NCBI GenBank assembly: GCA_037379345.1
Contig: CM074515.1
Location: 8,060,001 to 8,124,000 of the forward strand
Length of the DNA: 64,000 nt
Origin: Perna viridis
Lineage: Eukaryota
Reading direction: 5' to 3'
Numbering within the stretch: the first letter of the stretch is position 1; each line of letters begins with the position of its first letter. The position numbers and the translations under genes are program-made. Positions 405-64,000 of the stretch are shown piece by piece. Below the pieces are notes generated by a model, which searched no databases, had not been told where the DNA came from, and was given only the letters and a program-made list of their open reading frames with translations.

Positions 405-3400
405 TATAAAGATACAACAATGAAAGCAGTCTTCACAGAAACTATAAGACAGCAGAAATTTGATTACATAAAATATATGAAAAAAGAATTTTCTTAATCA
501 GTAAATCTGCAAGTCTAATAACACTCATTTGTTTCTACATAATTACAAATTCTTAATCATATCAATTTTGTTTTGGTTTAATATTTATAGGTAACTATTT
601 CTGAGAAGACTATCAAATGACTGGGAATGACACTTTGCTGAACACACATACAACATGTATAAAAAGAAACACAACATTCAGTGATATACTATTTCATCCA
701 TAAATGTACTAAATAAGGTCTGAAAAGAAGACCAGACTGTATAATATATATCTTTACTAGTTAATAGCAGAATATACTAGTGAATGATCTTGACAGTTAA
801 AGTTTCCAAGGGATTTAAGAATAATTTCAGAGAGTTAAACAGTACTCAACACTAAATCTGTTTTAATAACAGTGATTTGATAATTTTTGAATTACAAAAT
901 TACACGAACTATGTACCCTATAAACATGACACAGAGTAGAGTAACTACTAGACTTGCTTTCATCATTGGTGATACGGGTAGAAGTCTATATTTAATTTCC
1001 CAATGATTAATACATTAAATAACATATCAAGACAAAGCATGGATGTTTGTAACCGGTTACTAAAATGTTCCATATATCAGTACACCTATTGACTCAAGTC
1101 TCAGTCAGTCACAATGATAGCCTATGAAATCAAGACTTGAATTTTTCTAGTTGAAATAAATTACAAAATTAAAAAACCTTAATGGACCACCCAATTTTAA
1201 CTAGCATAGGTCCAAATGATTAGTCTTTACAAAGATAATATGGTAGTCAGTAAACATGGCAACATTCTCACCAAAAACTGATATGATCTTCCTTTCACAC
1301 AGCAAATAGTTCATTTATGTGATATTACTGTAAAAATTTGAGTGTTCTTTCAGTACAACCTTGGAGGAGGGACTGAGAAAAAATAATTAATACTAAGTTC
1401 TGGAATACCAACTAAGGAATACAAGCGAATCTTTTCATTTTCAGTTAAATCAATGGTGAAAATCAGTTTTAATCTAGGGTGAAATGTTCATTCCATTGTA
1501 TTGTATACAGTAACTGATCACATCTTACTATTCAATGCAAAATGAATTTCAATATAACATAAGTAAAAGTAAATAATAATACCCTTCAGAAAATCAAGCG
1601 ATACTGTATCTATATCACACCAAATTATAAGATAATACAAGATTTGGAAATTGAAAATATATGGTAATTTGAAGACTGTTCTTATACAATTTAAATGTAC
1701 CAAAGTTTTAACAATAAACAACCTTGCTTAACTTAGTTGAATATATATTGCTAACAGGACTATTCAATACTTCAACTTTCTTCACTGTAATGAAAACATT
1801 AAATGTTGGCACCATTTCTATTAAACATAGCTGTAGATCTAATGTAATCCCTTCCTTTCAATGACTTTATGTATTATTGGGAATCAAGCCAAAACAACAC
1901 CCAGGTACTCTCCCACCATACAATTCTATAAATTATCTCCACCCCATACTTTGTAAAATGTAGGCCACAACACGTATCATCAAGTCCTATGAGACAGATC
2001 TTCCTCATACATAAACATCAGTATTGCTAGTACATGTTGAGAAATAACAGAACAAATTAGGCTGTTTCATAACAAATCTTGAATCAACATTTCCCTCAAA
2101 TTTTTACCAACCCAAACTTAGATTTTGAGGAAATTCTCAAACAGAGATTTTTATTAAGTAACCAAGGCCAGTAACATGAAGATTTAGTGCTATTTCTACT
2201 TGGGCAGCTCATTTCAAAATTCCAATACTTTATGCCCCTGACAAAGGCTGTAAAGCCAAAAATTTGGGCTCACATTTATCAATTTGTTTTTACATTTTAT
2301 TATTTTATTTGTATTTAGTTCCTTTTTCACCTTTTATATGTGGCTGTCATTCACCAATTCATTATTCTTATTGACCTTTAATTCAAGCCACTTCACTACA
2401 TAGGTTATTTTCATTTCAAAATTGCAGTACAGTATATTATGGTATGTTATTCTTGCATAAGAATCATTTTCTGCATAGATTTAGAACACTACATGGAATA
2501 TCCTCTTAACAATCAATCCACAATCATCAAAATTGTAAAATAAATTTACAATGTAGCAAAATGTAAATGTAAAGCCCTAGTCATCCTTCTTAAGTACCTG
2601 CCTTTGTAAGAATCATGCAAAATCTGAAATATGTGGTACACCCCAAAAAAAGGCTACATATTTTTATTTTTGTAATTAAGTTGTTTCATGGGTCTATACC
2701 ATAAAAGTGTAATTATTCATTCAAATCTGCCTACTCTTAGGAGATAACCAACATTGAAAATCCAATAGATTCTATTGTATATGAGTGTCATTTACAGAGT
2801 TATCTCCCTTAATTTTGAAATCTACAGTGCATTCTATATAATTTTTATCTCTTAAGAACACGGGTTATATGATAAACTGAATGTTAATTTCTGTTTACTA
2901 TGGCAATTCAAACAAAATATCAAAAATAAAAATATGTAGGCTTTTTATCCATGAATCACAATTTGCATGATACTTAGCTGGAGTGCTACTTAATACTTCA
3001 TTCTTGTTATATTCATGTAATAAGATGAACCAGAATGAACTACTGGGAAAAGTTCTATCTATGAATATGAAATTGTTTAAGTTTACAATGTGCATTGTTT
3101 TGTCAAAAATAAATTGTCATAACTTCAAACTGTTAATCACACACCAAGAGTCAGCTAATTGTCAGTCAGAATTAAGAGAACAAAGCCCATTAAAACTATT
3201 TCTTACAGAAGGACAAAAGATAATATAAAGTACAGAATGATGGACTAAGGTCAAGCTATATTTGGATTGGGCATAATAACAAATCTGACATCCCTAAAAA
3301 GTGTTATACAAATTTATACATGTACTAACAAGAAAGAAACAGTCGAAATATTGATTGGTAACACTTTCAAGATTTTTTGATTGATTCAGAATTTATATTA

Positions 3401-6400
3401 AATCAGAACAGTGCATTGTCAGCAATTATCTTACCCTAAATGTCAAGAACATCTTTGTTTTTACATAACATTTCCAACAGCAACTGAAACATTTTCAGGA
3501 CAGTGACAATCCCCCACCTGGATTTAATCTAGGTGAACATTATACAAGATCAAAACATTATCATTTTCTAATCAACAATAGATATAAAAACACATGCTAT
3601 TAAAATTTAAGGGAAATTAAATAATGCAATATCCCTTCTAAAGCCATAATGGGAACTAAGTAACCTTAGATTTTCATTTAACCATTTGAACACAGAATTA
3701 AAATATACGGGAGACGGTAATATTATCAATATGTTTAAAAGAAACATATAAATAAACACAACACAATACAATTCCTTTTTTACTGCAAAGGAATCGTGGC
3801 ATACTTTTATAAGTCTTATAAGTAATAGATTTCAGGTTTAAATAAGTTTAATTTAATTTCCATGGTTTGTGCTGTTTTTTTTTTTCACTAATGGGCAACA
3901 GAGAAGTACAAAGGGCAGCTGGAAACATCCACTGGTTTTAGGGGCAGTTGAAGAATGGAGCAGCTCAAATCTCTCTAAAACTTTGACTGGGAGATTTAAC
4001 AATTAGCATAATTCTATCAGTTGTTTTACAGCATGTTACCTTACTACCATCAGCTAGCATTAAACGAAAATAAATTCAAACATGGTGACCAGACATTTTT
4101 TTAAATTTTATTATTAGAATTGGAAATATCTAAATATTACATTCATCAAAATTCAGAATATTACTTGAACTTTTCCACAATGACGTGCAGAATTGGACAT
4201 TTCTTAACAGACCAAAGCAGGAATTATCTCTTTGATCAGAAACTTTCACATTAATCAAACTTTTCCCATCTTTCATCATTATCTTGGTAAATGTACATTA
4301 AACCTTCTATAATTGAATATTTAGTCATTACCAAAGGAAAATTGATAACTTTTTATCCAACATCAATACATGCAATACCCATAGTAAATAGAGCTAACAA
4401 GTTGTATCTGTCATATAAGGTAATGATTCATTTTTATAAGTGGTGTTTTTTTCCTTTTTTGTTGTTAAATGAAAATAAGATATTGGATGCCAAAGAAAAA
4501 CTGAATATAAATCTATTTCTTGATGTAATTCTAAATAAAAATCAATTAGTAATAATTATCTAGTGGTCTCCTGGGAGAGTTTACCGCCAGACAGGAACTC
4601 ATAGATGATAAAGAATATCCATGTCCTATGTAAACATTAGGTAGTATAAGAAAATATCATCTTGACATCTCTACAGGAGTCAAACAGAGAATACCATTAA
4701 GGGACTGTCTAAGTTTTTTTTTCAATCCTTACAAAATGTGTGAAATTAAATGGAATAAAACAAAATACAAATATTATATGTACTAATGAAAGCTTATTTT
4801 CACTCTAAAGTTATTCTTACTATTCTCGCTGGACATTTATGAAAAGATTTTTCAATTCAAAAAATCATATACAATAGCATTTATAATTTTCTTCAGTCTA
4901 GCTCCATTGTGGACTATTTTTCAATTTATCTAGATAAGCTGACTTTTAAAGACATAAAGAAATTCTTTTCTCTGAACATGATCACCTCTGTTTATCACTG
5001 ACAATGGATAAAACTCTTTATTTAAAGAAAATCTCCTATTTGTAACACTTAAACCTGTTTTCATGTAGTTTTTTAACAAGATTAAACAGAAAACTTCAAT
5101 AACAACTACAAAATGTAACTCAGTAAGTCACTTGATTGTGGGATAAAGAGAACATTTTGCTGATTAAAGACAATTTAGAATCTTTGCCTTTGAAGGTAGC
5201 AAATTTTAATGACAGCCTATAAAACTGTACAAACAATACATGACAATACCTTTAGTTAGGAGGATTTAAACCGGCTATTGTAAGTTAAAGTCTTTTTACT
5301 TCTAAAGATAACATCCAGATGAAATTTAGATAGAAACAAATTTTTAAATGCAAGCTTATCTATTTATCAAAAGTTACTCAATTCATCATAGAACTTAGGA
5401 CATATATAAACCTGTACAATGAGTAACATATAAATATCAACATCTTCTTTAAATCGAGATCATATTTTAACTCCTATCCGCCAATCTAAAAAAAAAAAGT
5501 TATTTGTTCAAAACCACATTGTCCAAAATTTCCAAGTAAACATGCAATTTTGTACTTTATGTTAAGAAGTAATCTCCTCTTATTCCAAAGCATTTTGACT
5601 CTCCATATAAAAGTACAACACTATTTTGGTCATGAGCATAACAATATCAAAGCACTGATGGCAGAATATTTGTGGTGGTGCAATAAAATTTGGTCTTGTT
5701 TTAGTAGTTAGAGCAGAAATGCTAAGTTAACAATTAACATCACTGCAAGCTATTTCTGAATAACGAGATCCCATCTTTTCGTTTACCAGAAAGTGGATCT
5801 TGTTCCCCCCCTAAAAAAAAAAAAAAATGGCCAGAGCAATCATGTAGAGAAAAGCGTTCACAAAATCAGACAGTAACCTGTTCTGAAATCCCACATCTCA
5901 ATTTTGCATATCTATAGATTGTATTTACAAAAATATCTAGTGGTAGTGAAGAGAAGTAGAAAAGTTTGGTGCCTTTCATTTTTTTACTTTTTTTTTTTTT
6001 GCTTTTTAAGAAGGTAAACACACAAACGTGTTGATTTCACATCCTGGTACAAAACCTATTTCATTGTAAATAACCTCCAAAAAGTAAGTCATTTCTTGGT
6101 CATGCTAACAAAAATCTTGAGTTTCTTTCCTTTAAGTTTGTAAAAGTACATGCAATATATCATTCCAATTTCCTGTGGTTCAAGAAAGTAGAACACATCT
6201 AACACAGCCTTCATTGTTCTACTGATGAGAGCATTTGACCTTTACATTTTGACTTTTTATAATCTACAGGATCTCTACATGTAGTCAATTTCCTTTTAAA
6301 TTTCATCCTAATTAGAAAAGTTATTGAAGGTCTCATACAGAGGGTTAATCAGACTGGGGATTGTAACTAGAAAGGCTATTGAACATCTCATATAGAGGGT

Positions 6401-7749: not shown

Positions 7750-8261
7750 TTCCGTGCCCATTTAATCCCTCTTTAATTCTTTAGGGTGGCCAACAGTTGA
7801 GAATAGAAGTAGATACCACAAGTGCCTATTGATCTTCAAATGTTTAAATGGGTTAGCTCCATCTTATTTAGCAGATAAAATAAAATCCATACCATTCAAG
7901 AAATACCATAAACAATGCTCTTTTAATTCCTAAACCTAAGACAGAACTATTCAGACATACTTTTGTTTACTCTGGCCCATCTCTTTGGAATACCTTCCCA
8001 CATGAAATAAGAAGTGTAAAATGAATAACTCTTTTTAAGCAGAAATTAAAAACCTTCCTAATGGAATAATAGCAAAAAGAATAATCCAACTGTATTAACA
8101 TGTACTATAATGCAAAATGGTAACTTTGTTGGTATTCATATATGTATTATTTACAAGAACTCCTTTTGTGGCATTGGAATTAACCTTGTATTTTTGCTTT
8201 AGTGTAAGTGCCCCAGGGAAGATTAGTTGCAAACTAACTGTGTTAGCCTCTTGAAATAAAG
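7750..8261 (+). mobile_element. 5'-truncated CR1/L2-group LINE remnant (ORF2 C-terminus and 3' UTR)
   Basis: Translation YHKCLLIFKCLNGLAPSYL...LLIPKPKTELFRHTFVYSGPSLWNTFPHEIR...LFKQKLKTFL; ends in AATAAAG, with an (ATT)n tail displaced to 9065-9104. Confidence 0.75.
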
Positions 8262-8263
8262 TA

Positions 8264-9064
8264 CAGTGAAACTTCTCCAAACCAGACCCTCAGAAAACCA
8301 GTCTTCCCTTCAAACCGGCCATTTTCAGAAGTCCCGGCCGATATACCTTAAAAACTGTGTGTTTTGTCTTCAATAGACCAGCCATCCCCCAAAACCATAC
8401 ATCAGCCAGTTTTTTACAGTTTTAGTTACATATTTCAAATAAAAACAACTTCTCAATTCTGGCCGACCAGTTAATGTTCACCTGTAATAAAAGTGTCAAC
8501 AAAACTGTAAATGATTACTTAATATTACGTAATTAATAAATCATTCACTGGCCGGTTTGCATTTCATCATCGGACAGATGATAATTGAAGGGGACAGTAG
8601 TTTTAACAACAAATTTAATCCAGGCAACCGGGGTCATTTAATAGTACGATCTTTACAATCTTTTAATTGTCAATTAATGTGACCTATACCCAAGCCAAAA
8701 CAAAATAGGGGTGAAATTATTAGACTTCGTTGATAGGTAATTTACGAAAACAATGCAAATAATTAATTACCATCAATAACCCTTTGATCTTTATTAAATA
8801 CACATTTTTTCAAACCTGTGAACATAATTTTGTCGGCAGTACCGCTTGTAAAATCATATCATTTACGAATGATGCAAGCCTTGAAATGTAATAAAAGGCC
8901 AAAAAATTTTGAATTGACATTAAACATGTCTCAACCAACAAACTGAAAATGTGTAGGGTTATAGAGCACATTAATGGAAATAGCTCTTAGAATGCATTGC
9001 TATTTTTCACAAAACCGGCCATTTTTCTTGTCAATGTGATGGCCGGTTTGGAGAAATTTCACTG
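8264..9064. mobile_element. Tc1/mariner/pogo-type MITE
   Basis: TIRs CAGTGAAACTTCTCCAAACC / GGTTTGGAGAAATTTCACTG, flanked by TA on both sides; no ORF. Confidence 0.85.
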
Positions 9065-42908: not shown

Positions 42909-45900
42909 CTGTAAATAAAAAAAGAAAAAATTCTATGTGTCTCAATATTTTCATACATTAAATCATGTATCTCTTGCATAAGAAATTCTTCTCATAAATA
43001 ACAGAATTCAATGGTCAATACAACCGCTTCAGTAACAAATCTCATAATTAGCAAACAATGGTTTTTTTTATTTGTTTAAATAACAGAAAAATAAAAACTT
43101 TGACATTTTACTTTCAAAAGGCAATACTCTGTTAATGTTTCAAAAATTAACTTAATAAATATATACAGTCCTTCATTTATAACCCAAGTTTGAATGAGGT
43201 TCTTCATAAAAAGAACAGGATATTGACAAGTGCACATATATACAAAGGGCAATATAGAATTCCCTTTCCATTAGCTGCAAAGAAAGATACACAGATTTTT
43301 TTTCATGTTTTACCGTGTTTGAACTGGGTGACCTGAAAAACCTATATACATGAGTTATTCAAAACAGTGACAAAATCACCCCTTTCAAAGATTAATGAAT
43401 GTGCCTACAAAACATACTTAGTTTTAACATTAGACTTTGTTATTTCTTTGATCAATAATAGCTTTGTATTAACACAAATCAGTGTGTTTTATTACCTTCG
43501 ATCTAACTATGTCTGCCCACTTAGAGTCTACATCATAAGCAGGATTTTTTTCCAACCATTCTGTTAAGTATTTCAAAGGTGGGGCTTTAGCACCAGTTAT
43601 CTACAGTACACAATTTTTCAGAAAATTCAAATTTATTCAAATAAATTATTCAAGACTTATCAGCAGCTTTGTTAGTAAACAGGTTATAATAATTCATCAC
43701 CAAACCTTTATCAGTCAAATCTCATTAAGATATGGGTGATGTCACGACCTTTAACTCCTAATTCATATAAAAGAGTCCTTTAAATATGAGTTTTACACTA
43801 CTGTAATATGATAAGAATATAGTGGAAATTATATTACATATTGTTATAGTAAAATTAAACCGGAAAAAAAACCCTGCCATTTCATTTTCTTACCTTTTTA
43901 CCAGTTAATCTATTTACAACGGAGACATTTTCTTCTCCTGTCATTTTCAAGGGGTCAATCATGGATGGATCTAAGCGAGATTTCCTGCGCCTAGGGGTGT
44001 CCTAAAAATAAAAACCAAATTTATAAGTGTTAGTTTTCAGAGTAAACCTAAGGCCAACTAATATAATTTCTTAGTTCCCTGATGTCAATTTCACAAAAAG
44101 TCGCAAGTGTAAAGTCAATCATAAGTAATGACGTCACAACCTACAATAGCATTGTGACGTCATAACTTACGATCAGCTTCACAATTAAGACTTTTTGTGA
44201 ATTCTATGCCAGGTCCTCCCTCAACTCTTTGGTAGATGCCTCATCTATTTTTAGCACCAATAAAAGTATTAAGATATAATGACAAGGCAAAACAAGAAAT
44301 CAGTCTCAATAGTGATACCCTCACTTTTAATAATGATATAAGGAAAAAAAAGAAGGTCCTTGGTAAACAGAAAGTTGTTGCCGAAAATGGAACCCACTAT
44401 ATGGCACAGGGAGAATGTGTTAAAATTTCAAACCACTGTGATGAGTGGGGTTGATAAGAAATCTGTAATGGAAAAAAACTGTTAATAATGGAAACTGGGA
44501 CAAGGGTAAAACAGTATACCTTGCTCCCTGAGCAGGGGTAATTTAAGAACCTTAGCAAGAGCACTCACATACCCCACACGTCCCCATGTTGGATACTCAA
44601 GTAAATTTATTTGTAAGAGATATACATGTAGATGGACCCCCATAAAAAAAGGAATAAGAGTGTTTTTAGACTTTAGACCTTTATCTTCTAACTAAGTTCT
44701 GTTACTCAGAATGGTAGTTTCAAACTCCAGACTGTGATTTCTTTGAGTTTTAGTTAATCCAAAGTAAATATCATCGTAGTGGAACAAAACGTACACTTGA
44801 CCTGTAATTAATTATGGTGAACTTATATACCAAAAATCATGTCAAAATCTGCAAGCCTTTAGAAAAAAAAAGTCTGAAAAACGGTTACTTCTGTGAATTT
44901 AGCTAAGTTCAAGGCCCATAATTTTGGTAAAAATCATCGGAGCGACACCAACTACAAATTTGTCCTGTAATTTATCATGTTGAATTTCTGTACTAAAAAT
45001 CATGCCAATATCTCCAAGCGTAAAAAAAAAAAGTCCGGAAACCTTTTTTCAGTTAATTTTACTAAGTTCAAGGCCCATAATTTTGGTAAAAATCATCACA
45101 GCGGAATGAAACGTACACTTGACCTGTAACATATCATGGTGAACTTATATACCAAAAATCATGTCAATATCTGCAAGCGTTTAAAAAAAAGTCCGGAAAA
45201 CTGATGATGGACAGATGTACGGACAGGTCAAAACATTATACCCTTCGCAACTTTGTTGCGTGGGGTATAAAAATACAAACGTAGTCGTGTAACTTTTTCA
45301 AAGTTGAAGTAATTGGAGCAGCAACTCCTACTTAATTTAATACCTGACTCACATCAAACATGATATCTTCTTCATCACAATCTGCCACCATAAAGCCAGG
45401 ATGGTCATCTAACCATTTCTCCAGATCTTTTCTTTGTGGAGCTTCATCTCCTGATAGCCTACTGCCATCTTCTAAATTGATTACAGGAACTCGAGAATCT
45501 TAAAATAAAAACATTTCCCATATTTACCTAAGAAAACAATGATGCACAGAAACCAAAACCACTTGAGAAGTAAAAAGAAAAGAACACTGAGGGTAAAGTA
45601 ACTTAGATACAACTATAAAATAAAATGCAGGGACAAAGCATCAAAGTCAGGCTTGATGCATTTTTTTTTTAATCTTTGATGGTTATCAAATTTGATTTCG
45701 CAATGCATAGGTTTCTGACACAGAAATTGGGCCAAAAACTATAATTCTATATACAAAATATACACTTGTTAGATTATTACTCATACAATTTGGGCCCAAT
45801 TTAGAAAAACATTTGAAAATTTTACCCACAAGAAGATTCTGTATAATAAACTAAAAAAAATGAGGCTTAAATTAAAACCATTGAAATTGGTAAAAATATA

Positions 45901-54900: not shown

Positions 54901-57900
54901 CTTGTCCAATGGCTGAAAATACAACAATTATTTGATATATAGCTTTTTATTAGTTAATACAAAGATGTCTATTGTGTAATTCATTTTCCATTTCTAATTT
55001 CATTGGTGAACATAAATTATCTTCCTCTTTTTAGTACTTCTCTCACAATTATAAAGTCATTCAAAAGCACTAAAAATCAAGATCTTATCAAGAAAAGAAG
55101 ACTCTAATGATCCACAATATGACAATGAGCTTCTTCCATAAGGTGTCTAGGGAAGACCAGATCAAAACATGCAAGCTAAATATACAACTTCAGCCATTAA
55201 ATTAAAAGTATTTGATCACAATACATTTAGATATACATAAACAGCATGCAAAATTGAAAGTACAAATAGGACCATATCTTGATTCTAAGTGTTCTGTCAG
55301 AAATACTGCGAAATCACTAAACTCATAAGACTTTCCAACCAGCACACCTGGTAATAGGAGGTCTTCAGTATTAGCATGGCAATTCATCATGAACACTCGA
55401 GGTTGATAAGAAAAATTTCAGACTAACTCTATAGAATGTAGTTGGCAATAAATATTTTGTATTCATTTTTCAACCCAAAAATTCCACAAATGAAACCATA
55501 GACATTAATAACAAAAGTTGGATAAAACAAAAGATTGGATGCCAAGCACTTGTAGCAAATGGATAGACTGTCATAAGTTTGAAGAATAAAGCATGTTCAA
55601 AAATTTAAACCCATCACAACATATACAGATATTATTGACAATATTGGAATTAGCATTATAAAAAAATATACAGCCATCAGAATAAATGTAAAGCCACACA
55701 CCGTAAACTGAAAAGAAAATGAATGTTACGATTCATGCATATTCTGATATCATACCTTTCCCATAATCCGAAAAAACTGTCAAATAAATAGGAAAATATT
55801 ACTTGCAATGACTGAAAGTTTTTTTTTCCGGTAAGTTTAACGTTTGTTTTGTATGATATTGTAAAATGAAGATTCAAGTGCCAAACCATATAACTGATTT
55901 ACAGGGATGGTTTTATGAGGTCATCAAACAAAGCGGAAATTGGTAAAATTGGAAATAAAAAAACAGTAAAAAAAGGAATCCAGATTTCAATTAGCGGAAT
56001 TCCCCTAAAAAGTGGAAAAATATCAACTCTAGATTTACAAAACATACAAAACTACTTTAATCAGTATGGTAATTTGCACCCTTGAAAAAAATTGTTTAAA
56101 ATTTCAGGTGTATGTTGGTATCTAACAAATGATGACAAACAGTAAGGAAAATTGTGAAATTTAACAAATATGCTTAGATCTTGAAAAATACCAGACCAAA
56201 TATGACACCATTTCATGTATTTCAAGGAGAACAGCTGCTAAACCTTGAATTTGGAAAAGTTAAACAAAGATATGACCTTCATTTCATGATCAGAAACCTA
56301 ATAATACTGAAGGTCAAACTGTTCCCTGAAGCCAATTTACTAAGTACCGATAACCCAACCCTACAAAATCATCATACCCTGTTTAATAAGTAGTATGAAT
56401 GAACTACAAAGGCAGGGAAAAGACAAGAAATGTAAAATATACCTCTGTTGATACTGAATTTTTTCATCTTCTTTGTATCTATTCATCATGTCATACCTTT
56501 CTCTTCTCTCCATTCTCTGTAAACCATACAGTATCAATATAGCCGCACAATAACAATAACAAACATATGGAAAATTATCAACTGTTAATAAACTCAATTA
56601 TGTTAGTTTACATATGTAAATACACAAATCATTTAGGTTTGGATTTAGAAATATAGTTGGTGGAGTTCAATTCTGAAACCATTCTATTTTCAAGAGCTTA
56701 GCAGTGTGCACTTCTGTAAAACAAGCACTACTTTATTTCGGATGCACAGACATATGACATATGTATGGACTGATATATGTATGAACATACCCTAGCTCTC
56801 TGAGCATCCTTTAACATTTGTCGTTTATGATTCCGTTGAAAGCTAGTGATGATTCTCCTTATACGTGTATTTAGATCTGACATGGATGGCCAGGGTAGTT
56901 TTTCCTCATCATCACATTCCATAGCAGATGGTGTGGAAAGGTCTTTGGCAGCATTACTGTTCTCCTGACTAGAGAGAACGGATGTACAGGTATCCTCATC
57001 TTCATCTTTCATCACACTGATATTACCTTTAGTATCATCTAAATCTTCCCTATAATCATTGATTTTTTTTTATTAATGAAAATACTCATTGCAAATGTCT
57101 CTTCACTTACATTTTCTCATTTTAATCCCATATATGAAAAATCCTACATCAATATTGTCTCAGGGCATAATCTAGGCGCCAAAATGGAGATTTTAGTTGC
57201 CAAGAATTTTTAAAAGTAGTTAAAAGTCGCCAACTCGTGTTCTTTTAAGAGAAGTGAAGTCGCTGTACAATTTGACCAAAGAGAGATAACTCTAGCCCTT
57301 CCAGGTAATAAACAACCAAATTAGCGGCAATTTGCGTAACGAAGAGAAAACATAAATTGGAAGAAGTTCACATAATTTTTGTCAGTTCCAAGCAATCCAG
57401 GGAATATTTCACCCATTCTAACGACTTGGATAATGGATAAAACCAGCAGTACTTATTTGAATGAAACTTATTCAACTTATTGAGTTCAAAATCAAAGGAA
57501 AACAATCACAAAAGGTAAGGTACATGTACATTTTGTGTTCCTTGATTAAATTTGTAATTTGATGACAACAATTAATTTATTTACTCAATGAGAGACTCTT
57601 ACAGTGATTTCAATGGTTTTAAAAAACAATTAATAATTGGTAGGTTCAGCTTGGATCACAGTTATGTGTATGAGTGCATGTGGGTTCGAAGTGACACTTT
57701 GTTTTGATAAGGCAAAAATAATGATTATTAAGCTAACTATTATCATTTATAATCCCACTTAACAATGTACATATACATGCATGTCTGTACAGGTTGATTT
57801 GTGTCCCTACGTGGGCGCCATTTGTATTATAAGAAACAAGTTCTCAATGACAATCTGATCACTTACTATATTCAATTAAAGTTACTTATTATACATGAAC

Positions 57901-60504
57901 TTATTCATTTGCAAGTATAGAAAATGGAATTACAGTATTAAACTTAAACTTATCTTATTTGTTTATTATTTATTAGAATACATGTCCTTGAGATACAACT
58001 TCATATCAATACGATAAAATATTCTAGCGGTGATGTATGATTTCTCCCCATTCCAGTCTCACTTCTCCCTATCACTCCTGGAAGGGAGAAGTAAAATCTC
58101 CCATTCACTGAATCCTAGATTATGTCCTGGTGTCCTTTAATATTCATTGATATTATTTGTTTGTTTCATAATGATTCATCATTTCAATGCAACAGTGAAA
58201 CATCAGACTAAGATAACATCATATATATACAAGGGTTGGATATCTGATCACTGATGGTTAGTATGTTTTCAGTGACTGTAGATTCAATAATAACTAGGAC
58301 AGCAAGTATAAACTTTGACAATCTAAATTTCCTAGAACAGTGATATCAACTGAAATCAAACCTCTGATATATATATTACATGCAGGTATCACAAATCACC
58401 TAACTTCTTAAGATACAAGTACTTACTCATCATCACCACCATCATTTTGTTCAGCAGCTAAAGCAGCTCCTGCTGGTGGACCACAACGAGCGAGGAAACA
58501 TAAACAGGGGTCGTTCCTCATCAAGTTATACTTCTCATAACCTGAAATTTACAGGAAATATTTGTGTTAGTGTATAGTTAATTACAGAGTAAAAACTACT
58601 GTCAGAATTGACCCAATAAGAACTAAGGAGTAAATTCACTAATACTAGTTCCAGGCTTAGGCCCAAAAATAAAATGTCTGTTTTAGGGTTACATTCCTCC
58701 CAAAAATAGGGTAGGTAGGTATTTTCATTTTATTTTTTTTTTTTCATTTTATTTTTCTCAACTAAAGTTGAGCCTATATTTGTAAAATAGCATCATGTTT
58801 AAGTCATGAAAGTGTATGGTTTTAAGTAGAAAGTTTAATGTTTAACATACACATCTATTAATCATGTCTTTTATTACAATACATTTATTGTATTTTTTGT
58901 AGGAATTTTGAACAAAATATAAGTACACTGTATTTGAAAATGATACCTGCAAATACAAGTTACAAATTTCTCTGTTCATTGACATATTTTTTTAAAGAAA
59001 AAGTGAAAAATGCATATTTATATGAATAAAGTGTTATCAAAATGTTTCATTCAAGAAATGAAGAATGTCTGACCTGTATGTTATAGATGTACAAATGTAT
59101 GTCTGGTATCGTAAAATAAGTTGCAACACTTATTGTTAATGTTTTTCTGTCAACTTCTTCATGATAGAGCTCAAAAAGCTCCCCAAGTAAAATCAGTCTA
59201 CTTGGAAGTGATGACACCAAAAATTTGCTTTCTTGGTGACAGCATTTATTATATTTTAGTGCCATGATACTCGTGGCTTCCATTGCGCTCATCATCAGTT
59301 ATACGCTCGGATTTACGTGATATAAATCAGCCTTCTATTCAAACGCTTTTGTGACCTGGTTTTAAACGTACTTTTGGTTTGACCGGAAATGATCTGTATT
59401 ATACAAGAAATTGGTGGAAATTACCAATTTTGTTAATTTGGGAGAAAAAATGTATTAGGGTCGGGGGAAAAAAAATTAGGGTCAGTCGCGAAACCTGAAT
59501 CAGACATTTTTTTGGGGGGCCTTACTATTTTGCGAAAGTTTCAACTTACTATATGAAATTTTCTATTTGCCTATTTTAAATCACAAAATTTGTACTGTAA
59601 CAATCCATACATACATCTTAAATCAATGCCCACTACACAATTTTTTTTTCTCAGTGTAAAAATTCCTTTAACACTTATGGTGACATCCTCAATTCCTGAT
59701 ACCTGTAAGACAACCAACAATAATTCATGTACATAATTAAAATGCCCAATCTTAAGAGTTTATGACTTACCATGTTTAAATACACCAATCAACAGAGATC
59801 TATCAGATAGTTCATCCCACCATGGTGTTGGTGGATCCCCTTCAACAGTAGTTCTTGGAAGCTCTATTTCACTGAAACAAACATCAACACATCAACATCA
59901 GATCATTTGTAAATAAACTCTGAATAATGTGCTTGATCATATACCCTAATTTGATCATTACCCTTTCAAACAGTAGTTTGGCTCATTCTCCAGATATATC
60001 TCCACTATCATACAAACTAATGCATGAATGTCCTGTATAAGAAACATCAGACATCACGATTGTCACTGATGTGATTAGGGTTAGATCGCTAATGTCATCA
60101 CATATTCAACAAACAGGAAACTTACACTTAAAAACAATATTGCAATACCTTTGATAAGTATTAAGTCACCTCAGGAAGGAACAGCTACACACTGACTAAA
60201 TCTCAAAAGATCTTGGTAAATGATAGCTTAGTGTCTATCTATTGACCAAACTGATTCTACTTAACTTGACGGAAATTCTATTGAACTAAATGAAATAACC
60301 ACTGAATTGCATGTTCATGTACACATATGTTAAAAGATTAAATATTTTTAGTAATAGTATATATATACATGTATTATAAACTACTATAGATACCCTTTGT
60401 TTTTGTAAGATTACCTGACATCCAGTCCTTTGTTGATTTTCTCTGCAGCATCACCAATTATTTCTTCTCTTAGATAGTACAATAATCTGACTCGCAACAA
60501 CACT
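41889..60504 (-). CDS. CHD7: CHD7/CHD8/Kismet-like chromodomain helicase, 3' part (5' exons outside window). Exons: 60415-60504, 59771-59871, 58427-58541, 56791-57049, 56443-56516, 54701-54912, 54142-54355, ~53751-53884, 52283-52962, 52019-52102, ~51550-51795, 50666-50717, 49685-49818, 47996-48064, 46298-46433, 45353-45498, 43894-44001, 43496-43600, 41889-42908
   Basis: GT-AG exons join in frame and give CHD6-9 subfamily motifs: [139 protein letters not shown], two BRK domains ([35 protein letters not shown]; [36 protein letters not shown]). The symbol denotes the invertebrate CHD6-9/kismet family member. Two donor sites are ambiguous. Confidence 0.93.
44553..45272 (+). mobile_element. Helentron/HINE (DINE-1-like) element with internal ~160-bp tandem repeats
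   Basis: Subterminal inverted repeat ATACCCCAC / GTGGGGTAT, short palindrome CGCAAC..GTTGCG, GGAC/AGAC microsatellite-like tract, and about three tandem units at 44760-45200. Confidence 0.65.
52283..52962 (-). CDS. CHD7: Long acidic (Glu/Lys/Asp-rich) exon of the CHD7/Kismet-like gene
   Basis: Part of ORF 52256..53086; ttttag acceptor, gtaagt donor; in phase with neighbouring exons. Confidence 0.8.
55288..55397 (-). ncRNA. SNORD8: Box C/D snoRNA, SNORD8/SNORD9 (mgU6-53) family, predicted guide for U6 snRNA A53 2'-O-methylation
   Basis: Minus strand: AGTGTTC-ATGATGA(C)-ATTGCCATGCTAATA-CTGA(D')-...-CTGA(D)-CA-GAACACT, with a 7-bp terminal stem. GCCATGCTAAT is complementary to U6 AUUAGCAUGGC. 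Intronic and sense to the CHD host gene. Confidence 0.92.
57161..58129. mobile_element. hAT-like non-autonomous element
   Basis: TIRs CAGGGCATAATCTAGG / CCTAGATTATGTCCTG; target duplication not clear. Confidence 0.65.
58197..58257 (-). ncRNA. Degenerate box C/D snoRNA candidate related to the array
   Basis: GTGATCA-GATATCCAACC-CTTG-TATATAT-ATGATGT-TATCTTAGT-CTGA-TGTTTC; imperfect C box but colinear with the array unit. Confidence 0.4.
58657..59524. mobile_element. Non-autonomous TIR element
   Basis: Imperfect ~35-bp TIRs TTAGGCCCAAAAATAAAATGTCTG / CAGACATTTTTTTGGGGGGCCTTA. Confidence 0.65.
60041..60107 (-). ncRNA. Solitary intronic box C/D snoRNA candidate, diverged relative of the array
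   Basis: GAATAT-GTGATGA-CATTAGCGATCTAACC-CTAA-...-CTGA-TGTTTC; same size, a GATCYAAC core at the same position and the same CTGATGT end. Confidence 0.55.
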
Positions 60505-60936
60505 CTAAAAAAAGGATAGGAAAAACACATCAAGAATAAGAGACACAAGTGTAACTCAGTGTGGAACAGGTGAAATAGCAATATAAGGACTTTTCAATGC
60601 AAACATAACATGAGGCAAGTGTAATTTGTGAATGGACAAAGATATAAGCTAGCAAAGAATTTTGATAGATGTGTCACTTATCATAATTTGGTATCATGCT
60701 CAGTCCTAGAAACTTATTACAAGTTGTCCAATATTACGAGTGTATTTGCAGATTACCTCCTATCAGATAGATCCTCAGCGATGATTCTAAGGTTTAATTT
60801 GTATAGATAACTGTTGTGAGGTCTTCGACATTAAGTGACCTTGCCAAATACAAATAATAAGATATTGCAGATATAATTATTGTTTACATGTCAAAGAAGC
60901 CTTATGGTACATTTGTTAGATACACAAATCAAAACA

Positions 60937-61001
60937 GAACATCAGTTTTAAGAAATCATCACTTTAAAGTATGTGTTGGACCTCTTTATCATCATTTGTT
61001 C
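60937..61001 (-). ncRNA. Array box C/D snoRNA copy 1 (intact boxes)
   Basis: GAACAA-ATGATGA-TAAAGAGGTCCAACACATACTTTAAA-GTGATGA-TTTCTTAAAA-CTGA-TGTTC; terminal stem GAACA/TGTTC. Confidence 0.75.
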
Positions 61002-61354
61002 AAAATTACAAACATTTGCTTCAGTATTTTCTGAAAAGTACAATAAATAAAACAAGAAAATAACATACTTATCCTAAATTAAACATGTAACAATATGTTC
61101 TAGAGTTTGAAAAATTTAATGCTATCCATGGAAAGCTTCAGCATGACATTTAAATTCACAACAAAATCCAACTTTTCAGGACAAACTTAATCTGCCTATG
61201 GAAATGGGTGATGGGAATTTTTAAGACTTGAACAAGTATTTATGAATAAAAGACACCAAAGGAAAGAGTGTCATGGTTTTTCTTCAGGTCATCATCCTAA
61301 TGGAAGAGGCAACCCTTCATAATCCTGTCAATACAAAAGGACCCTAATTTATGC

Positions 61355-61415
61355 CAAACACACATAAGAAATCATCATTACTCAATATGTGTTGGATCTC
61401 TTGATCATCATATGT
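61355..61415 (-). ncRNA. Array copy 2 (box D lost; possible pseudogene)
   Basis: ATGATGA-TCAAGAGATCCAACACATATTGAGTA-ATGATGA-TTTCTTATGTGTGTTTGG; no terminal CTGA. Confidence 0.55.
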
Positions 61416-62040
61416 ACTGCTGTAATTGTATTAAACTTCTTGAGTATCCTCAAATGAAAGAACAAATTTTTGTGTTTTAATTTCCATGGTTTTGTAAAAT
61501 TATAAGCGATTCATAATATAAAATGATTAAAAATAAATGTTTAAAATTTCATTTGACTCTTTTTTTTAATTTATTTACTGCAAAAATAGCAGAATATACT
61601 TCCATGATAGTGATTCATCATTCATAAGTATACAAGAATCACTGCTTAAATCATATTTTGGGGGTTGGAGGTAAGGTTAAGGATCAAGTTTTAACAAATT
61701 ACAACCCAAATCTTAGAAAGCTAACTCTGTGACCAAACAATCCTGAGTGCAGCAAATGAGAGAAACTAGAGACACGCTCTTAAAATGAACGTTAGACAAA
61801 TAATAAATCATCACTACACACACTATTGTGGACCTCTTACTAATGTGCATCCATTCAACATACAAACATTTTTTTTTTTTGTGTGTGTTCGCGGTACCTT
61901 TGTTCAAATTCTTAGACAGGCTTTACATGACAGAACCTGTAATTGTAACAACTAGTTCAAAGGAGAAGTAGTAACCAAACAACAAAAAATCTTTACAAAG
62001 CTTTGACACCAATTTTATTTAAACAGTAGAATTACAAAAT

Positions 62041-62107
62041 GAACATCAGAAAAATAAGAAATCATCATTAAGCAATATGTGTTGGATCTCTTGATCATCA
62101 TATGTCC
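62041..62107 (-). ncRNA. Array box C/D snoRNA copy 3 (intact boxes)
   Basis: GGACAT-ATGATGA-TCAAGAGATCCAACACATATTGCTTA-ATGATGA-TTTCTTATTTTT-CTGA-TGTTC. Confidence 0.78.
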
Positions 62108-62241
62108 CAATTCAAAATTCAAAATATCAAATCTAAGTCGTGTATAGAGGCTCGTTATCTTTCTTGTAAACCAACCAGTTCTCCAGATTTATGGACACCG
62201 ATATGATCATTATAAGTATACAAACATTGGAAACAGAAAAC

Positions 62242-62306
62242 ACATCAGACAAATAAGAAATCATCATTACACAATATGTGTTGGATCTCTTGATCATCAT
62301 TTGTCC
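62242..62306 (-). ncRNA. Array box C/D snoRNA copy 4 (intact boxes)
   Basis: ACAA-ATGATGA-TCAAGAGATCCAACACATATTGTGTA-ATGATGA-TTTCTTATTTGT-CTGA-TGT. Confidence 0.78.
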
Positions 62307-62734
62307 TAATTCAAAATCCAAATAACCAAAAATATTCATGTTTGAAAGCTTTTGTTATTTTTCTTTGTGTGTATCAACCAGCAGTCTTCAATAAATTCTT
62401 ATAGAAAAATTGTTGACATTTCAAAAAATGCTGGACCAAAACAGCCTTTACTGGACTAATTTTTTTGTGTGTATTTAAGTCCCAATAGGCGATAGATTTT
62501 TACAAGAATTATGGTTCTTCCTCTTATTAAGGAGTGGAACAACATCAGACTTACACACAGCCTAAAAACAAGTTTTTCTTCTGATTAGATTGCAAAATTG
62601 TTGGTTTTGTCCATTGGAAAGTCGGTCTTCATGAAGACTGAACCAGTTCTATAGATTGTGAACACCAGTATGATCATTTTAAATCATCAAACATTTGAAA
62701 CAGAGAAAACAAGATTGATTTTTTCTCCCCAAGC

Positions 62735-62798
62735 ACATCAGATAAATAAGAAATCATCATTACACAATATGTGTTGGATCTCTTGATCATCATATGTC
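62735..62798 (-). ncRNA. Array box C/D snoRNA copy 5 (intact boxes)
   Basis: ACAT-ATGATGA-TCAAGAGATCCAACACATATTGTGTA-ATGATGA-TTTCTTATTTAT-CTGA-TGT. Confidence 0.78.
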
Positions 62799-63300
62799 CT
62801 AATTCAAAATGCAAAATAACAAATTCACGTATACAGACTTTTGTTATTTTTTTGTCTAAACCAACCAGCAGTCTTCACTAAGTCCTACAGAAAAATGGTA
62901 GACATTTTCAAGAAATGCTGGACCAAAGTACCCTTTCTCTGATCAAGGTGTGGAACAATGTCAAACTGACAGATCACTGGATAACACATCTCTGCTGGTT
63001 GGATCTCTATATTAATTGTTTTATCCACAGGACCAACAGACTTTGTGAAGACTGAACCATTACACAGATTGAGAACACCACTATAAGAAATGATTTTAGA
63101 AGGAACAACAGTTTAGCAGAAATTGGCAAAATGGGAAGTAAATAAATTTTAAAAATAAAGAATCATTATGGTAAAATCAGGATTACAAACAAAAACCAAA
63201 ACAGAAATCTGCCAAAAAGCAAAAGAATATAATCCCAGCAGTATCATCATCTCAAATCATTTACAAACATTTGTAACTAAGGAAACTGGATATTTCCCCC

Positions 63301-63361
63301 AAACAGACAAATAAGAAATCATCATTACACAGTTTGTGTTGGATCTCTTTATCATCATATG
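63301..63361 (-). ncRNA. Array copy 6 (box D degenerate, CTGT)
   Basis: ATGATGA-TAAAGAGATCCAACACAAACTGTGTA-ATGATGA-TTTCTTATTTGT-CTGT; terminal stem lost. Confidence 0.55.
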
Positions 63362-63833
63362 AATGACTTTTGAATCTTACAGAAATGCTGTAAGCCAACT
63401 ATTTTAAAAGATACTTATTCCATGTTTCAGGGTGTCAATTCAATTTTGATGCTATTTTATCTTGACTTACACTTTATCTTACATATATTTGATAATGAAG
63501 GACTATTTCATGACAATCTGTTTTCACCTCTCTTGCGAGGGGATGGGTTCTGGAAAATTTGTGAAAATAACAGACCATTAATGAATGTGATTTGATTTAT
63601 AGTATTCAGTGGAGAAAATTAAAATGTTTATTTACCTCTCATCTTTCAGAGAACATTGTAAAATAGATTGATATTTTTACAACAGAGAAGATTTTACGAG
63701 GTCAACAAAGAAAGAGGAAATTGGCAAAATCAGACGTAAATACACAGGGAAAAAAAAGAATCGTAATGGTAAAATCCAGATTTGAAATAGTGGAATTCCA
63801 CTATAAAGCAGAAAAAAATCATCCCTGTCACAA

Positions 63834-63900
63834 GAACATCAGGCATAAAAGAAATCATCATTATAAAATATGTGTTGGATCTCTTGATCATCATATGTTC
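63834..63900 (-). ncRNA. Array box C/D snoRNA copy 7 (intact boxes)
   Basis: GAACAT-ATGATGA-TCAAGAGATCCAACACATATTTTATA-ATGATGA-TTTCTTTTATGC-CTGA-TGTTC; terminal stem GAACA/TGTTC. Confidence 0.78.
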
Positions 63901-64000
63901 TCACTAAATAATAAACGAAAGGATGAAAAAGCTATTTTAAGGTGATTAAGTTGAACTAAGATTATGTCCTAGAGTTAAACATTTGAACCAAATGTATCAC

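What the first reader, a model, noticed from the sequence alone, without database searches (positions are those of the whole stretch)
60937..63900. Tandem array of at least seven compact box C/D snoRNA genes inside one intron of the CHD7/Kismet gene
Seen: a ~56-nt core recurs seven times at irregular 200-700 bp spacing, always sense to the host gene. Consensus: ATGATGA-TCAAGAGATCCAACACATA-N7-ATGATGA-TTTCTT-N4-6-CTGA. That is box C, an antisense element, a perfect C' box and box D, closed by a short ACA/TGT or GAACA/TGTTC stem. The cores are nearly identical, while the spacers retain only patchy homology (caaccagcagtcttca, gaagactgaacca, caaacatttg, aattggcaaaat). This fits old tandem duplication with selection on the RNA only. 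Established: animal intronic snoRNAs are usually one per intron; large tandem C/D arrays are best known from mammalian imprinted loci (SNORD113-116), and polycistronic intronic clusters mainly from plants. Inference: this is a lineage-specific amplified snoRNA cluster in a chromatin-remodeller gene, needing endonucleolytic processing or hidden exons. It may continue past the window end. I cannot tell whether it is already annotated.
Basis: partly seen in the sequence, partly recalled or inferred. Interest (0 to 1): 0.9.

Follow-up and report, generated by a model that had tools for sequence, protein, structure and literature searches.

The report
Tandem snoRNA genes in mussel CHD7 intron

Summary
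A 26-nt core (box C plus guide) occurs seven times on the minus strand at 60937-63901. These are its only occurrences in the 723-Mb genome. Five copies have box C, a C' box, box D and a 3-7 bp terminal stem. Two have lost box D, and there are one or two decayed relics.

Spliced RNA contigs from four studies join window 60504 directly to 64863. All copies therefore lie, in sense, in one GT..AG intron of 4358 nt. The host is a CHD6-9/kismet-type gene, with SNF2 exons upstream and two BRK exons downstream. The array does not continue past the window.

Cores are 95-98% identical between copies, flanks 31-37%, and alignable spacers 70-76%. No Rfam family matches.

The conserved guide forms its best duplex (10 Watson-Crick pairs) with 18S 639-648. 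That stretch covers the equivalent of human 18S-Gm683, the SNORD19/69 site. The D' box is degenerate, however.

The orthologous intron in three other species is short and empty, so the cluster is lineage-specific.

No small-RNA data could be examined, so mature snoRNAs are inferred, not shown. Several snoRNAs in one intron are already known from Drosophila and rice. Earlier notes of this scan record other snoRNAs in this genome, one of them in this same gene.

The parts
60505..64000 (-). Host intron of the CHD6-9/kismet-type gene. The full intron is window-equivalent 60505-64862 (G000:C5:8120505-8124862), 4358 nt, GT..AG, phase 2 (AA|GTATGT ... TTTTTTAG|A).
   Evidence: Joint L010 804->5163 (CT..AC on the + strand) in contigs of 4 runs from 4 studies; the reading frame continues across it...HLHRHANK|[10 protein letters not shown].
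60415..60504 (-). Exon just downstream of the host intron (90 nt, ...[28 protein letters not shown]).
   Evidence: Joints 171->715 and 804->5163 in L010 coordinates; translation.
60937..61001 (-). Copy c1: intact C/D unit with box C, C' (GTGATGA), CTGA and a 5-bp stem GAACA/TGTTC. Its guide has A>G at position 8, which keeps pairing as G-U. It lies 432 nt upstream of the 3' splice site.
   Evidence: best generic Rfam score is SNORD27, 30.1 bits, below threshold.
61350..61418 (-). Copy c2: core identical to the consensus, but box D is missing (an apparent small deletion) and there is no terminal stem.
61786..61857 (-). Decayed relic copy: box C lost, CTAA in place of CTGA.
   Evidence: Alignment; model R1 gives 38.7 bits, E about 0.005.
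62041..62107 (-). Copy c3: intact, stem GGACA/TGTTC.
62240..62306 (-). Copy c4: intact boxes, 3-bp stem ACA/TGT plus a G-U pair.
62733..62799 (-). Copy c5: intact; 2 differences from c4 in 65 nt, while the spacers beside them are 76% identical.
63299..63365 (-). Copy c6: box D reads CTGT and there is no terminal stem; two changes in the guide.
63833..63901 (-). Copy c7: intact, terminal stem of up to 7 bp; the 5'-most copy, about 960 nt from the 5' splice site.
63700..63832 (.). Interspersed repeat of about 130 nt in the spacer (a second copy at about 63119-63189). It is not part of the snoRNA unit.
   Evidence: Whole-genome DNA search: 1361 first-look candidates; the 39 scored outside this locus are 84-91% identical, on all chromosomes and both strands. 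Foreign contig ends at these places.

Best explanation
This is a lineage-specific cluster of paralogous box C/D snoRNA genes made by repeated local (cis) duplication inside one intron of a mussel CHD6-9/kismet-type gene. The copies are transcribed as part of the CHD7-like pre-mRNA. After splicing, each intact unit (c1, c3, c4, c5, c7) is expected to bind the core C/D proteins on its C/D and C'/D' motifs. The units would then be released by cuts between them plus exonuclease trimming, because none lies at the short distance from the branch point that favours splicing-coupled release. The conserved 19-nt element after box C most likely guides 2'-O-methylation of 18S rRNA at G642, the equivalent of human Gm683, which SNORD19/SNORD69 guide in vertebrates. 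It would do so using a degenerate D' box (CAUA). Copies c2 and c6 have lost box D and are probably dead or dying copies. Shown: the sequence anatomy, uniqueness in the genome, the single intron, sense orientation, the host gene, the conservation pattern and the complementarity to 18S. Inferred: the mature RNA, the processing route and the methylation.
For: Seven copies, with none elsewhere in 723 Mb by pattern or by covariance model. Box C is perfect in 7/7 copies, C' in 7/7, box D in 5/7 and a terminal stem in 5/7. Every weak Rfam hit on this strand is to a C/D family and nearly all align over the whole model. The single GT..AG intron is spliced in 4 runs from 4 studies, and intronic contigs containing copies are present. 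The host gene has two BRK exons and SNF2 exons on the same strand, and an ortholog's exon carries HTH_CHD6-9. Mean pairwise identity is 0.95-0.98 in the two conserved blocks, against 0.31-0.37 in upstream flanks and 0.63-0.65 in the 7-nt linker; spacers are 70-76% identical. The best duplex among 18S, 5.8S, 28S, ITS, U6 and U2 is 18S 636-651, at -18.4 kcal/mol with 10 contiguous Watson-Crick pairs. Only 3.7% of shuffled guides reach a 10-nt run. Anchoring on the 530 loop puts the human sites 627, 644, 649, 651, 668 and 683 on matching bases, and Gm683 on mussel G642 inside the duplex. SNORD19/69 guide 18S-G683 and 28S-G4464 (PMC6984369), and the mussel 28S has the same GTTGGAT core at 3210, with a weaker duplex. 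The one guide change in c1 keeps pairing as G-U.
Against: No small-RNA or end-mapping data are available; the contigs cannot show a discrete 65-nt RNA. There is no canonical D' box, so the fifth-nucleotide rule is met only if CAUA is accepted as D'. Complementarity is only 10 bp, the low end for guides, and p = 0.037 on its own is modest. The Rfam SNORD19 and SNORD69 models do not match these copies and find nothing over threshold anywhere in the genome. The two copies without box D keep a nearly perfect core. That could mean concerted evolution rather than selection on each snoRNP. No relative close enough to test cross-species conservation could be reached.
Confidence: 0.6

Rival explanations
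1. The units are real C/D snoRNPs, but their role is not rRNA methylation. They could be orphan or regulatory snoRNAs. Alternatively, pairs of snoRNPs could protect the spacer between them from exonucleases, giving stable snoRNA-ended long intronic RNAs (sno-lncRNA type) that act on the host gene or bind splicing factors.
For: The D' box is degenerate and only 10 bp pair with 18S. All 19 nt of the element are conserved, not just the 10 that pair. The c4-c5 spacer is the only intronic interval covered by contigs of this locus in all four RNA runs, and those contigs end inside snoRNA copies. Several snoRNAs in one intron is the layout that yields sno-lncRNAs in mammals (my own knowledge: Yin et al. 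2012).
Against: Contigs must break at repeated 31-mers, so ends inside copies are expected from assembly alone, and the tool itself warns that gaps and depth prove nothing. No site in the genome complements 17 or more of the 19 nt above the control rate: 12 hits against 14 for the reversed pattern. The match to a known conserved methylation site is hard to dismiss.
Confidence: 0.2
2. The array is mostly non-functional: snoRNA-like pseudogenes amplified by unequal crossing-over. Their cores look conserved because of gene conversion or recent duplication, and no stable RNA is produced.
For: Two of the seven copies lack box D yet keep the core. There are two relics. No family match and no cross-species conservation was shown.
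Against: Conservation drops to background exactly at the snoRNA ends, while spacers are 24-30% diverged. Islands of 65 nt are short for gene conversion (inference). Within the unit, the variable positions are those expected to be free: the linker and the nt before box D. Five copies keep all motifs and a stem.
Confidence: 0.15
3. The unit is a transposon, SINE or satellite that merely resembles a snoRNA.
For: It is repeated, and a true dispersed repeat lies in the spacers.
Against: The core occurs only in this intron, always on one strand. Spacing is irregular (199-690 nt). There is no dispersal.
Confidence: 0.02

Closest known systems
Intronic snoRNA gene clusters of Drosophila melanogaster and rice (several snoRNAs in one intron; Huang et al. 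2004/2005, as cited in PMC2780460 and PMC5932544)
   Same: Several paralogous snoRNAs lie in sense within a single spliceosomal intron of a host gene. They arose by local duplication, and splicing plus trimming alone cannot release them.
   Different: This case is a mollusc, with seven copies of one C/D family. The Drosophila paper cited concerns box H/ACA clusters. The host here is a chromatin-remodeller gene rather than a ribosome-related or non-coding host.
SNORD19 / SNORD69 (vertebrate C/D snoRNAs in GNL3 introns guiding 18S-Gm683 and 28S-Gm4464; PMC6984369)
   Same: The guide is complementary to the same GUUGGAU core of 18S and, more weakly, of 28S. The predicted modified base is the equivalent of Gm683.
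   Different: There is no sequence-family match to the Rfam models RF00569 or RF00574. The host gene differs, the RNA is more compact (about 65 nt), and the guide sits before a degenerate D' box. This is a functional analogue at best; orthology is not shown.
Mammalian imprinted C/D arrays SNORD113/114 and SNORD115/116
   Same: Many tandem, near-identical C/D copies with diverged spacers.
   Different: In those arrays each copy has its own intron in a repeated non-coding host (my own knowledge). Here all copies share one intron of a protein-coding gene. The copy number is far lower, and nothing is known about imprinting.
mgU6-53 (SNORD8/SNORD9) in human CHD8 introns
   Same: It shows that CHD6-9 genes are old snoRNA hosts. 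The same mussel gene carries an mgU6-53-like snoRNA at 55289-55395.
   Different: That is a different snoRNA family and target (U6 A53), a single copy, in another intron.

Membership tests
Box C/D snoRNA (class) | Box C RUGAUGA near the 5' end | tested here: met
   ATGATGA in 7/7 copies.
Box C/D snoRNA (class) | Box D CUGA near the 3' end | tested here: met
   CTGA in c1, c3, c4, c5 and c7; absent in c2; CTGT in c6.
Box C/D snoRNA (class) | Short terminal stem bringing boxes C and D together | tested here: met
   3-7 bp in the five intact copies (GAACA/TGTTC, GGACA/TGTTC, ACA/TGT); none in c2 or c6.
Box C/D snoRNA (class) | Internal C' and D' boxes | tested here: inconclusive
   C' TGATGA is perfect in 7/7 copies. 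No CUGA-like D' is present; the only conserved candidate is CAUA, and the linker after it varies.
Box C/D snoRNA (class) | Antisense element of 10 nt or more to rRNA/snRNA, with the modified base opposite the 5th nt upstream of D/D' | tested here: inconclusive
   10 Watson-Crick pairs with 18S 639-648; shuffles p = 0.037. G642 lies opposite the 5th nt upstream of CAUA only if CAUA is accepted as D'.
Box C/D snoRNA (class) | Stable RNA of about 60-100 nt bound by fibrillarin, NOP56, NOP58 and SNU13 | not testable with these tools
   Only assembled contigs of ordinary RNA runs were available.
SNORD19/SNORD69 family | Match to the Rfam covariance models RF00569 / RF00574 | tested here: not met
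   Neither model appears among the hits at E up to 10 on the copies. The best genome-wide scores are 25.1 and 27.9 bits, at other loci and below the cut-offs.
SNORD19/SNORD69 family | Guide for 18S-Gm683 (and 28S-Gm4464) | tested here: inconclusive
   Complementarity covers the equivalent base, with a weaker 28S duplex. Methylation was not measured.
Intronic snoRNA gene cluster | Two or more snoRNA genes in sense within one intron | tested here: met
   One splice joint spans all copies in 4 runs, and there are no internal joints except an assembly loop at the 493-nt repeat.
SNORD115/116-type array | One snoRNA per intron of a repeated non-coding host unit | tested here: not met
   A single 4358-nt intron of a coding gene; no exon-like joints were seen between copies.
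Transposable element / satellite | Dispersed copies in both orientations, or a regular head-to-tail period | tested here: not met
   All copies lie in one intron on one strand, with irregular spacing.

The most novel reading that the evidence does not exclude
The seven-copy array is not just a dosage cluster. Because several snoRNPs sit in one intron far from the splice sites, the excised intron may be trimmed to stable snoRNA-capped long RNAs (sno-lncRNAs). These would be the first outside mammals, made from a CHD7-type chromatin-remodeller gene, and might regulate the host gene or sequester RNA-binding proteins.
Probability: 0.1. Interest if true: 0.7.

Novelty: new member of a known kind. 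Interest (0 to 1): 0.35.

Why it matters
Very little is known about snoRNAs in molluscs. This locus gives a clean example of how a new C/D family is born and amplified by local duplication inside a protein-coding host, with intact, recently broken and fully decayed copies side by side. It suggests that the conserved 18S site known as Gm683 in humans is served in a mussel by a guide unrelated in sequence to SNORD19/69, that is, guide turnover at a conserved site. It also offers a natural test case for releasing several snoRNAs from a single animal intron. The same gene carries an mgU6-53-like snoRNA, as human CHD8 does, so CHD6-9 genes seem to be long-standing snoRNA hosts. None of this overturns current views: the layout is already known from flies and plants.

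Tried and rejected
1. Rfam at gathering thresholds over the whole window found nothing. With E-value thresholds it gave only generic C/D hits of 15-30 bits, so no family assignment is possible.

2. I first took the 18S site for human Gm644 (SNORD54; PMC3766210), working from a wrong numbering recalled from memory. Anchoring on the 530 loop (human G626, from my own knowledge) showed that Gm644 lies 39 nt upstream. The site under the duplex corresponds to Gm683. SNORD54 is rejected.

3. I tested U6 A53 (mgU6-53), prompted by CHD8 hosting SNORD8/9. The cluster guide has no notable duplex with U6 or U2.

4. A genome search for a canonical guide (box C, GATCCAAC, then CTGA) gave 3 hits, none with convincing snoRNA features.

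5. A genome search for near-perfect complements of the 19-nt guide gave hits at the control rate only.

6. A pattern scan of JGI metagenome contigs gave 13 loci, all acidic coding repeats, with no snoRNA.

7. Searching the protein collection with an open frame that runs through a snoRNA copy, hoping to catch relatives' contigs, gave no candidates.

8. Relatives reached through the flanking exons did not help. L019 is the same species (99.7% identical). L018 is another genus whose roughly 800 nt of intron cannot be aligned and holds no copy.

9. A C/D-looking stretch in the orthologous intron of L036 (about 8796-8870) had no Rfam support at E up to 1 and was dropped.

10. Minimum-free-energy folding gives no significant z-score (-0.9 to -1.3). 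This is expected for C/D snoRNAs and is not informative.

Exon translations were searched one at a time, by reference.
Full report
**Observation.** The region was read directly. The 26-nt core (box C plus the following 19 nt) matches seven times within three mismatches. All matches are on the minus strand, at 60970, 61386, 62076, 62275, 62768, 63333 and 63869, with none expected by chance. Start-to-start spacing is irregular: 416, 690, 199, 493, 565 and 536 nt.

Alignment of the units gives this plan. A short 5' stem arm is followed by ATGATGA and a 19-nt conserved element (TCAAGAGATCCAACACATA). Seven variable nt follow, then (A/G)TGATGA, TTTCTT, 4-6 variable nt, CTGA and the 3' stem arm. The whole unit is about 65 nt.

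Five copies (c1, c3, c4, c5, c7) have every element. Copy c2 lacks CTGA, and c6 has CTGT and no stem. A decayed copy lies at 61786-61857, and there is a doubtful fragment near 62960-63015.

**Uniqueness.** In the whole 723-Mb assembly the core occurs only at these seven places. A covariance model built from the seven copies finds only them and the relic at 61786-61857; everything else scores at E above 3. Only the best first-look candidates are scored in that search, so very diverged members could be missed. The unit is therefore not a dispersed element, and the array does not continue beyond the window.

**Host gene and intron.** Earlier notes of this scan call the genome a mussel; I did not test that. 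On the minus strand the window holds two BRK-domain exons at 43520-43600 and 45380-45502. The best SNF2 exons of the genome lie 7-10 kb beyond the window end, on the same strand. Open frames between them read like the CHD6-9 core and its SANT/SLIDE-like region. An ortholog's exon carries Pfam HTH_CHD6-9.

I laid assembled contigs of four runs from four studies on G000:C5:8119701-8125400 (window coordinate = locus coordinate + 59700). All four runs showed the same joint, 804 to 5163, with CT..AC ends. That is one GT..AG intron on the minus strand, window-equivalent 60505-64862, 4358 nt. The reading frame continues across it (...HLHRHANK | [10 protein letters not shown]...), with the lysine codon split AA|A.

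The only other joint inside the intron is a 493-nt 'goes back' loop, which is what an assembler does at the c4/c5 repeat. No hidden exons were seen. Because these contigs are spliced, the runs contain RNA.

Contigs from within the intron, including ones that cover copies, are present in all four runs. They cannot show RNA ends or levels, and they necessarily break at the repeated cores.

All copies are thus in sense within a single intron. Copy c1 lies 432 nt from the 3' splice site, and the others are up to 3.4 kb away.

**Conservation pattern.** Mean pairwise identity among the seven copies varies sharply along the unit:
- box C plus guide: 0.96
- C' box plus TTTCTT: 0.98
- 7-nt linker: 0.65
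- the ten nt before box C (stem arm): 0.60
- further upstream: 0.37, about background for this AT-rich DNA

Where spacers can be aligned at all they are 70-76% identical. For example, c4 and c5 differ at 2 of 65 positions inside the unit, while 304 nt of neighbouring spacer are 75.7% identical. Conservation ends at the borders of the RNA, which argues for selection on the RNA.

One caveat: the two copies without box D keep near-perfect cores. Either they were disabled recently or some concerted evolution is at work.

It has more than 1300 candidate copies genome-wide, on both strands.

**Family.** No Rfam family reaches its threshold. With permissive thresholds, every hit on this strand is to a C/D family, nearly all aligned end to end, at 15-30 bits.

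**Target.** I took the rDNA unit of the same genome and U6 and U2. Among 18S, 5.8S, 28S, the spacers, U6 and U2, the best duplex of the 19-nt element is with 18S 636-651, at -18.4 kcal/mol. It has ten contiguous Watson-Crick pairs, GAGAUCCAAC with GUUGGAUCUC at 639-648. Of 20,000 shuffled guides, 3.7% reach a 10-nt run somewhere in mature rRNA.

I anchored the numbering on the 530 loop (human G626, from my own knowledge). In this indel-free stretch the known human sites Um627, Gm644, Psi649, Psi651, Am668 and Gm683 then all fall on the right base in the mussel sequence. Gm683 falls on G642, inside the duplex.

In vertebrates 18S-G683 is guided by SNORD19, and by SNORD69 in fish and frog. The same element also guides 28S-G4464 (PMC6984369). 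The mussel 28S has the same GTTGGAT core at 3210, with a weaker duplex of -11.2 kcal/mol. That this is the G4464 equivalent rests on my memory of the sequence.

G642 pairs with the fifth nucleotide upstream of CAUA. CAUA is conserved in six copies, but it is a poor D' box. The single guide change in c1 (A to G) keeps the pair as G-U.

I therefore rate 'guide for the Gm683-equivalent site' as the most likely function, but not as established. The Rfam SNORD19 and SNORD69 models match neither these copies nor any other locus above threshold. So this is a functional analogue, not a shown ortholog.

No near-perfect complement of the guide exists elsewhere in the genome above the control rate.

**Other species.** The same phase-2 intron position is present in all of them.
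- L016: the intron is 112 nt.
- L033: about 310 nt.
- L036: about 770 nt.
- None of these three holds this snoRNA.
- L018, from another mussel-like genus (77% exon identity): about 800 nt of unalignable intron, without a copy.
- L019: the same species (99.7% identical).

The cluster is therefore lineage-specific. How far it extends within Mytilidae could not be tested.

**Mechanism.** The shown elements are the motifs, the single intron, the sense orientation and the conservation pattern. The inferred steps run as follows. The units are transcribed within the CHD7-like pre-mRNA. Core proteins assemble on each intact unit. Because the units lie hundreds to thousands of nt from the branch point and from each other, release needs cuts between units as well as exonuclease trimming. 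Without such cuts, snoRNA-ended long RNAs would persist (the sno-lncRNA reading). The mature RNPs then methylate 18S G642.

[quoted passage not shown] 2004 in PMC5932544). Local tandem duplication is a recognised main route to new snoRNA paralogs (PMC2653536). The mammalian SNORD115/116-type arrays differ in having one snoRNA per intron of a repeated non-coding host (my own knowledge).

I found no paper on such clusters in bivalves.

The same gene also holds an mgU6-53-like snoRNA at 55289-55395. It scores 29.3 bits against Rfam snoU6-53, below the threshold of 36, but its guide is identical to the family consensus. Human CHD8 hosts SNORD8/9 in the same way (my own knowledge). Another note reports three snoRNAs in one intron elsewhere in this genome (not tested).

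**Verdict.** This is a real, lineage-specific tandem cluster of a new C/D snoRNA family in one intron of a CHD6-9/kismet-type gene. Five copies are intact, two are damaged and one or two are relics. It is a new member of a known kind and of moderate interest. The mature RNA and the methylation remain to be shown.

Noticed in passing
window 55289-55395 (-): An mgU6-53 (SNORD8/9)-like C/D snoRNA sits in another intron of the same CHD6-9 gene. It scores 29.3 bits against Rfam snoU6-53 (threshold 36; E = 6.5e-5 in a local search), and its guide TTGCCATGCTAATACTGA is identical to the family consensus. Human CHD8 hosts SNORD8/9, so the host-gene link looks ancient.
   Followed up: partly
window 63700-63832 and 63119-63189; also about 55900-56050: An interspersed repeat of about 130 nt (SINE/MITE-like) has more than 1300 candidate copies on all chromosomes and both strands, at 84-91% identity. 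RNA contigs from other copies end on it; one 139-nt contig has depth 172 in run X3.
   Followed up: partly
G000:C2:52195776-52240417 and G000:C12:15169066-15266582: There are large tandem arrays of identical U6 genes (period about 690 nt, at least 48 copies listed) and of U2 genes (period about 1730 nt, at least 46 copies listed).
   Followed up: no
L036:8796-8870: The orthologous intron of an unidentified, more distant species contains a stretch with TGATGA ... CTGA and a short flanking stem that looks C/D-like. Rfam gave no match at E up to 1.
   Followed up: partly
window 62239-62307 and other copies: Within each unit AAGAGATC (in the guide) can pair with GATTTCTT (just after C'), 8 bp. The A>G change in c1 keeps this as G-U. 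It may be an internal helix that masks part of the guide, or a coincidence of two conserved blocks.
   Followed up: partly
L016:2388-2499; L033 about 890-1200; L036 about 8157-8925: The phase-2 intron position after ...HLHRHANK is conserved across distant species, while intron length ranges from 112 nt to 4358 nt.
   Followed up: yes
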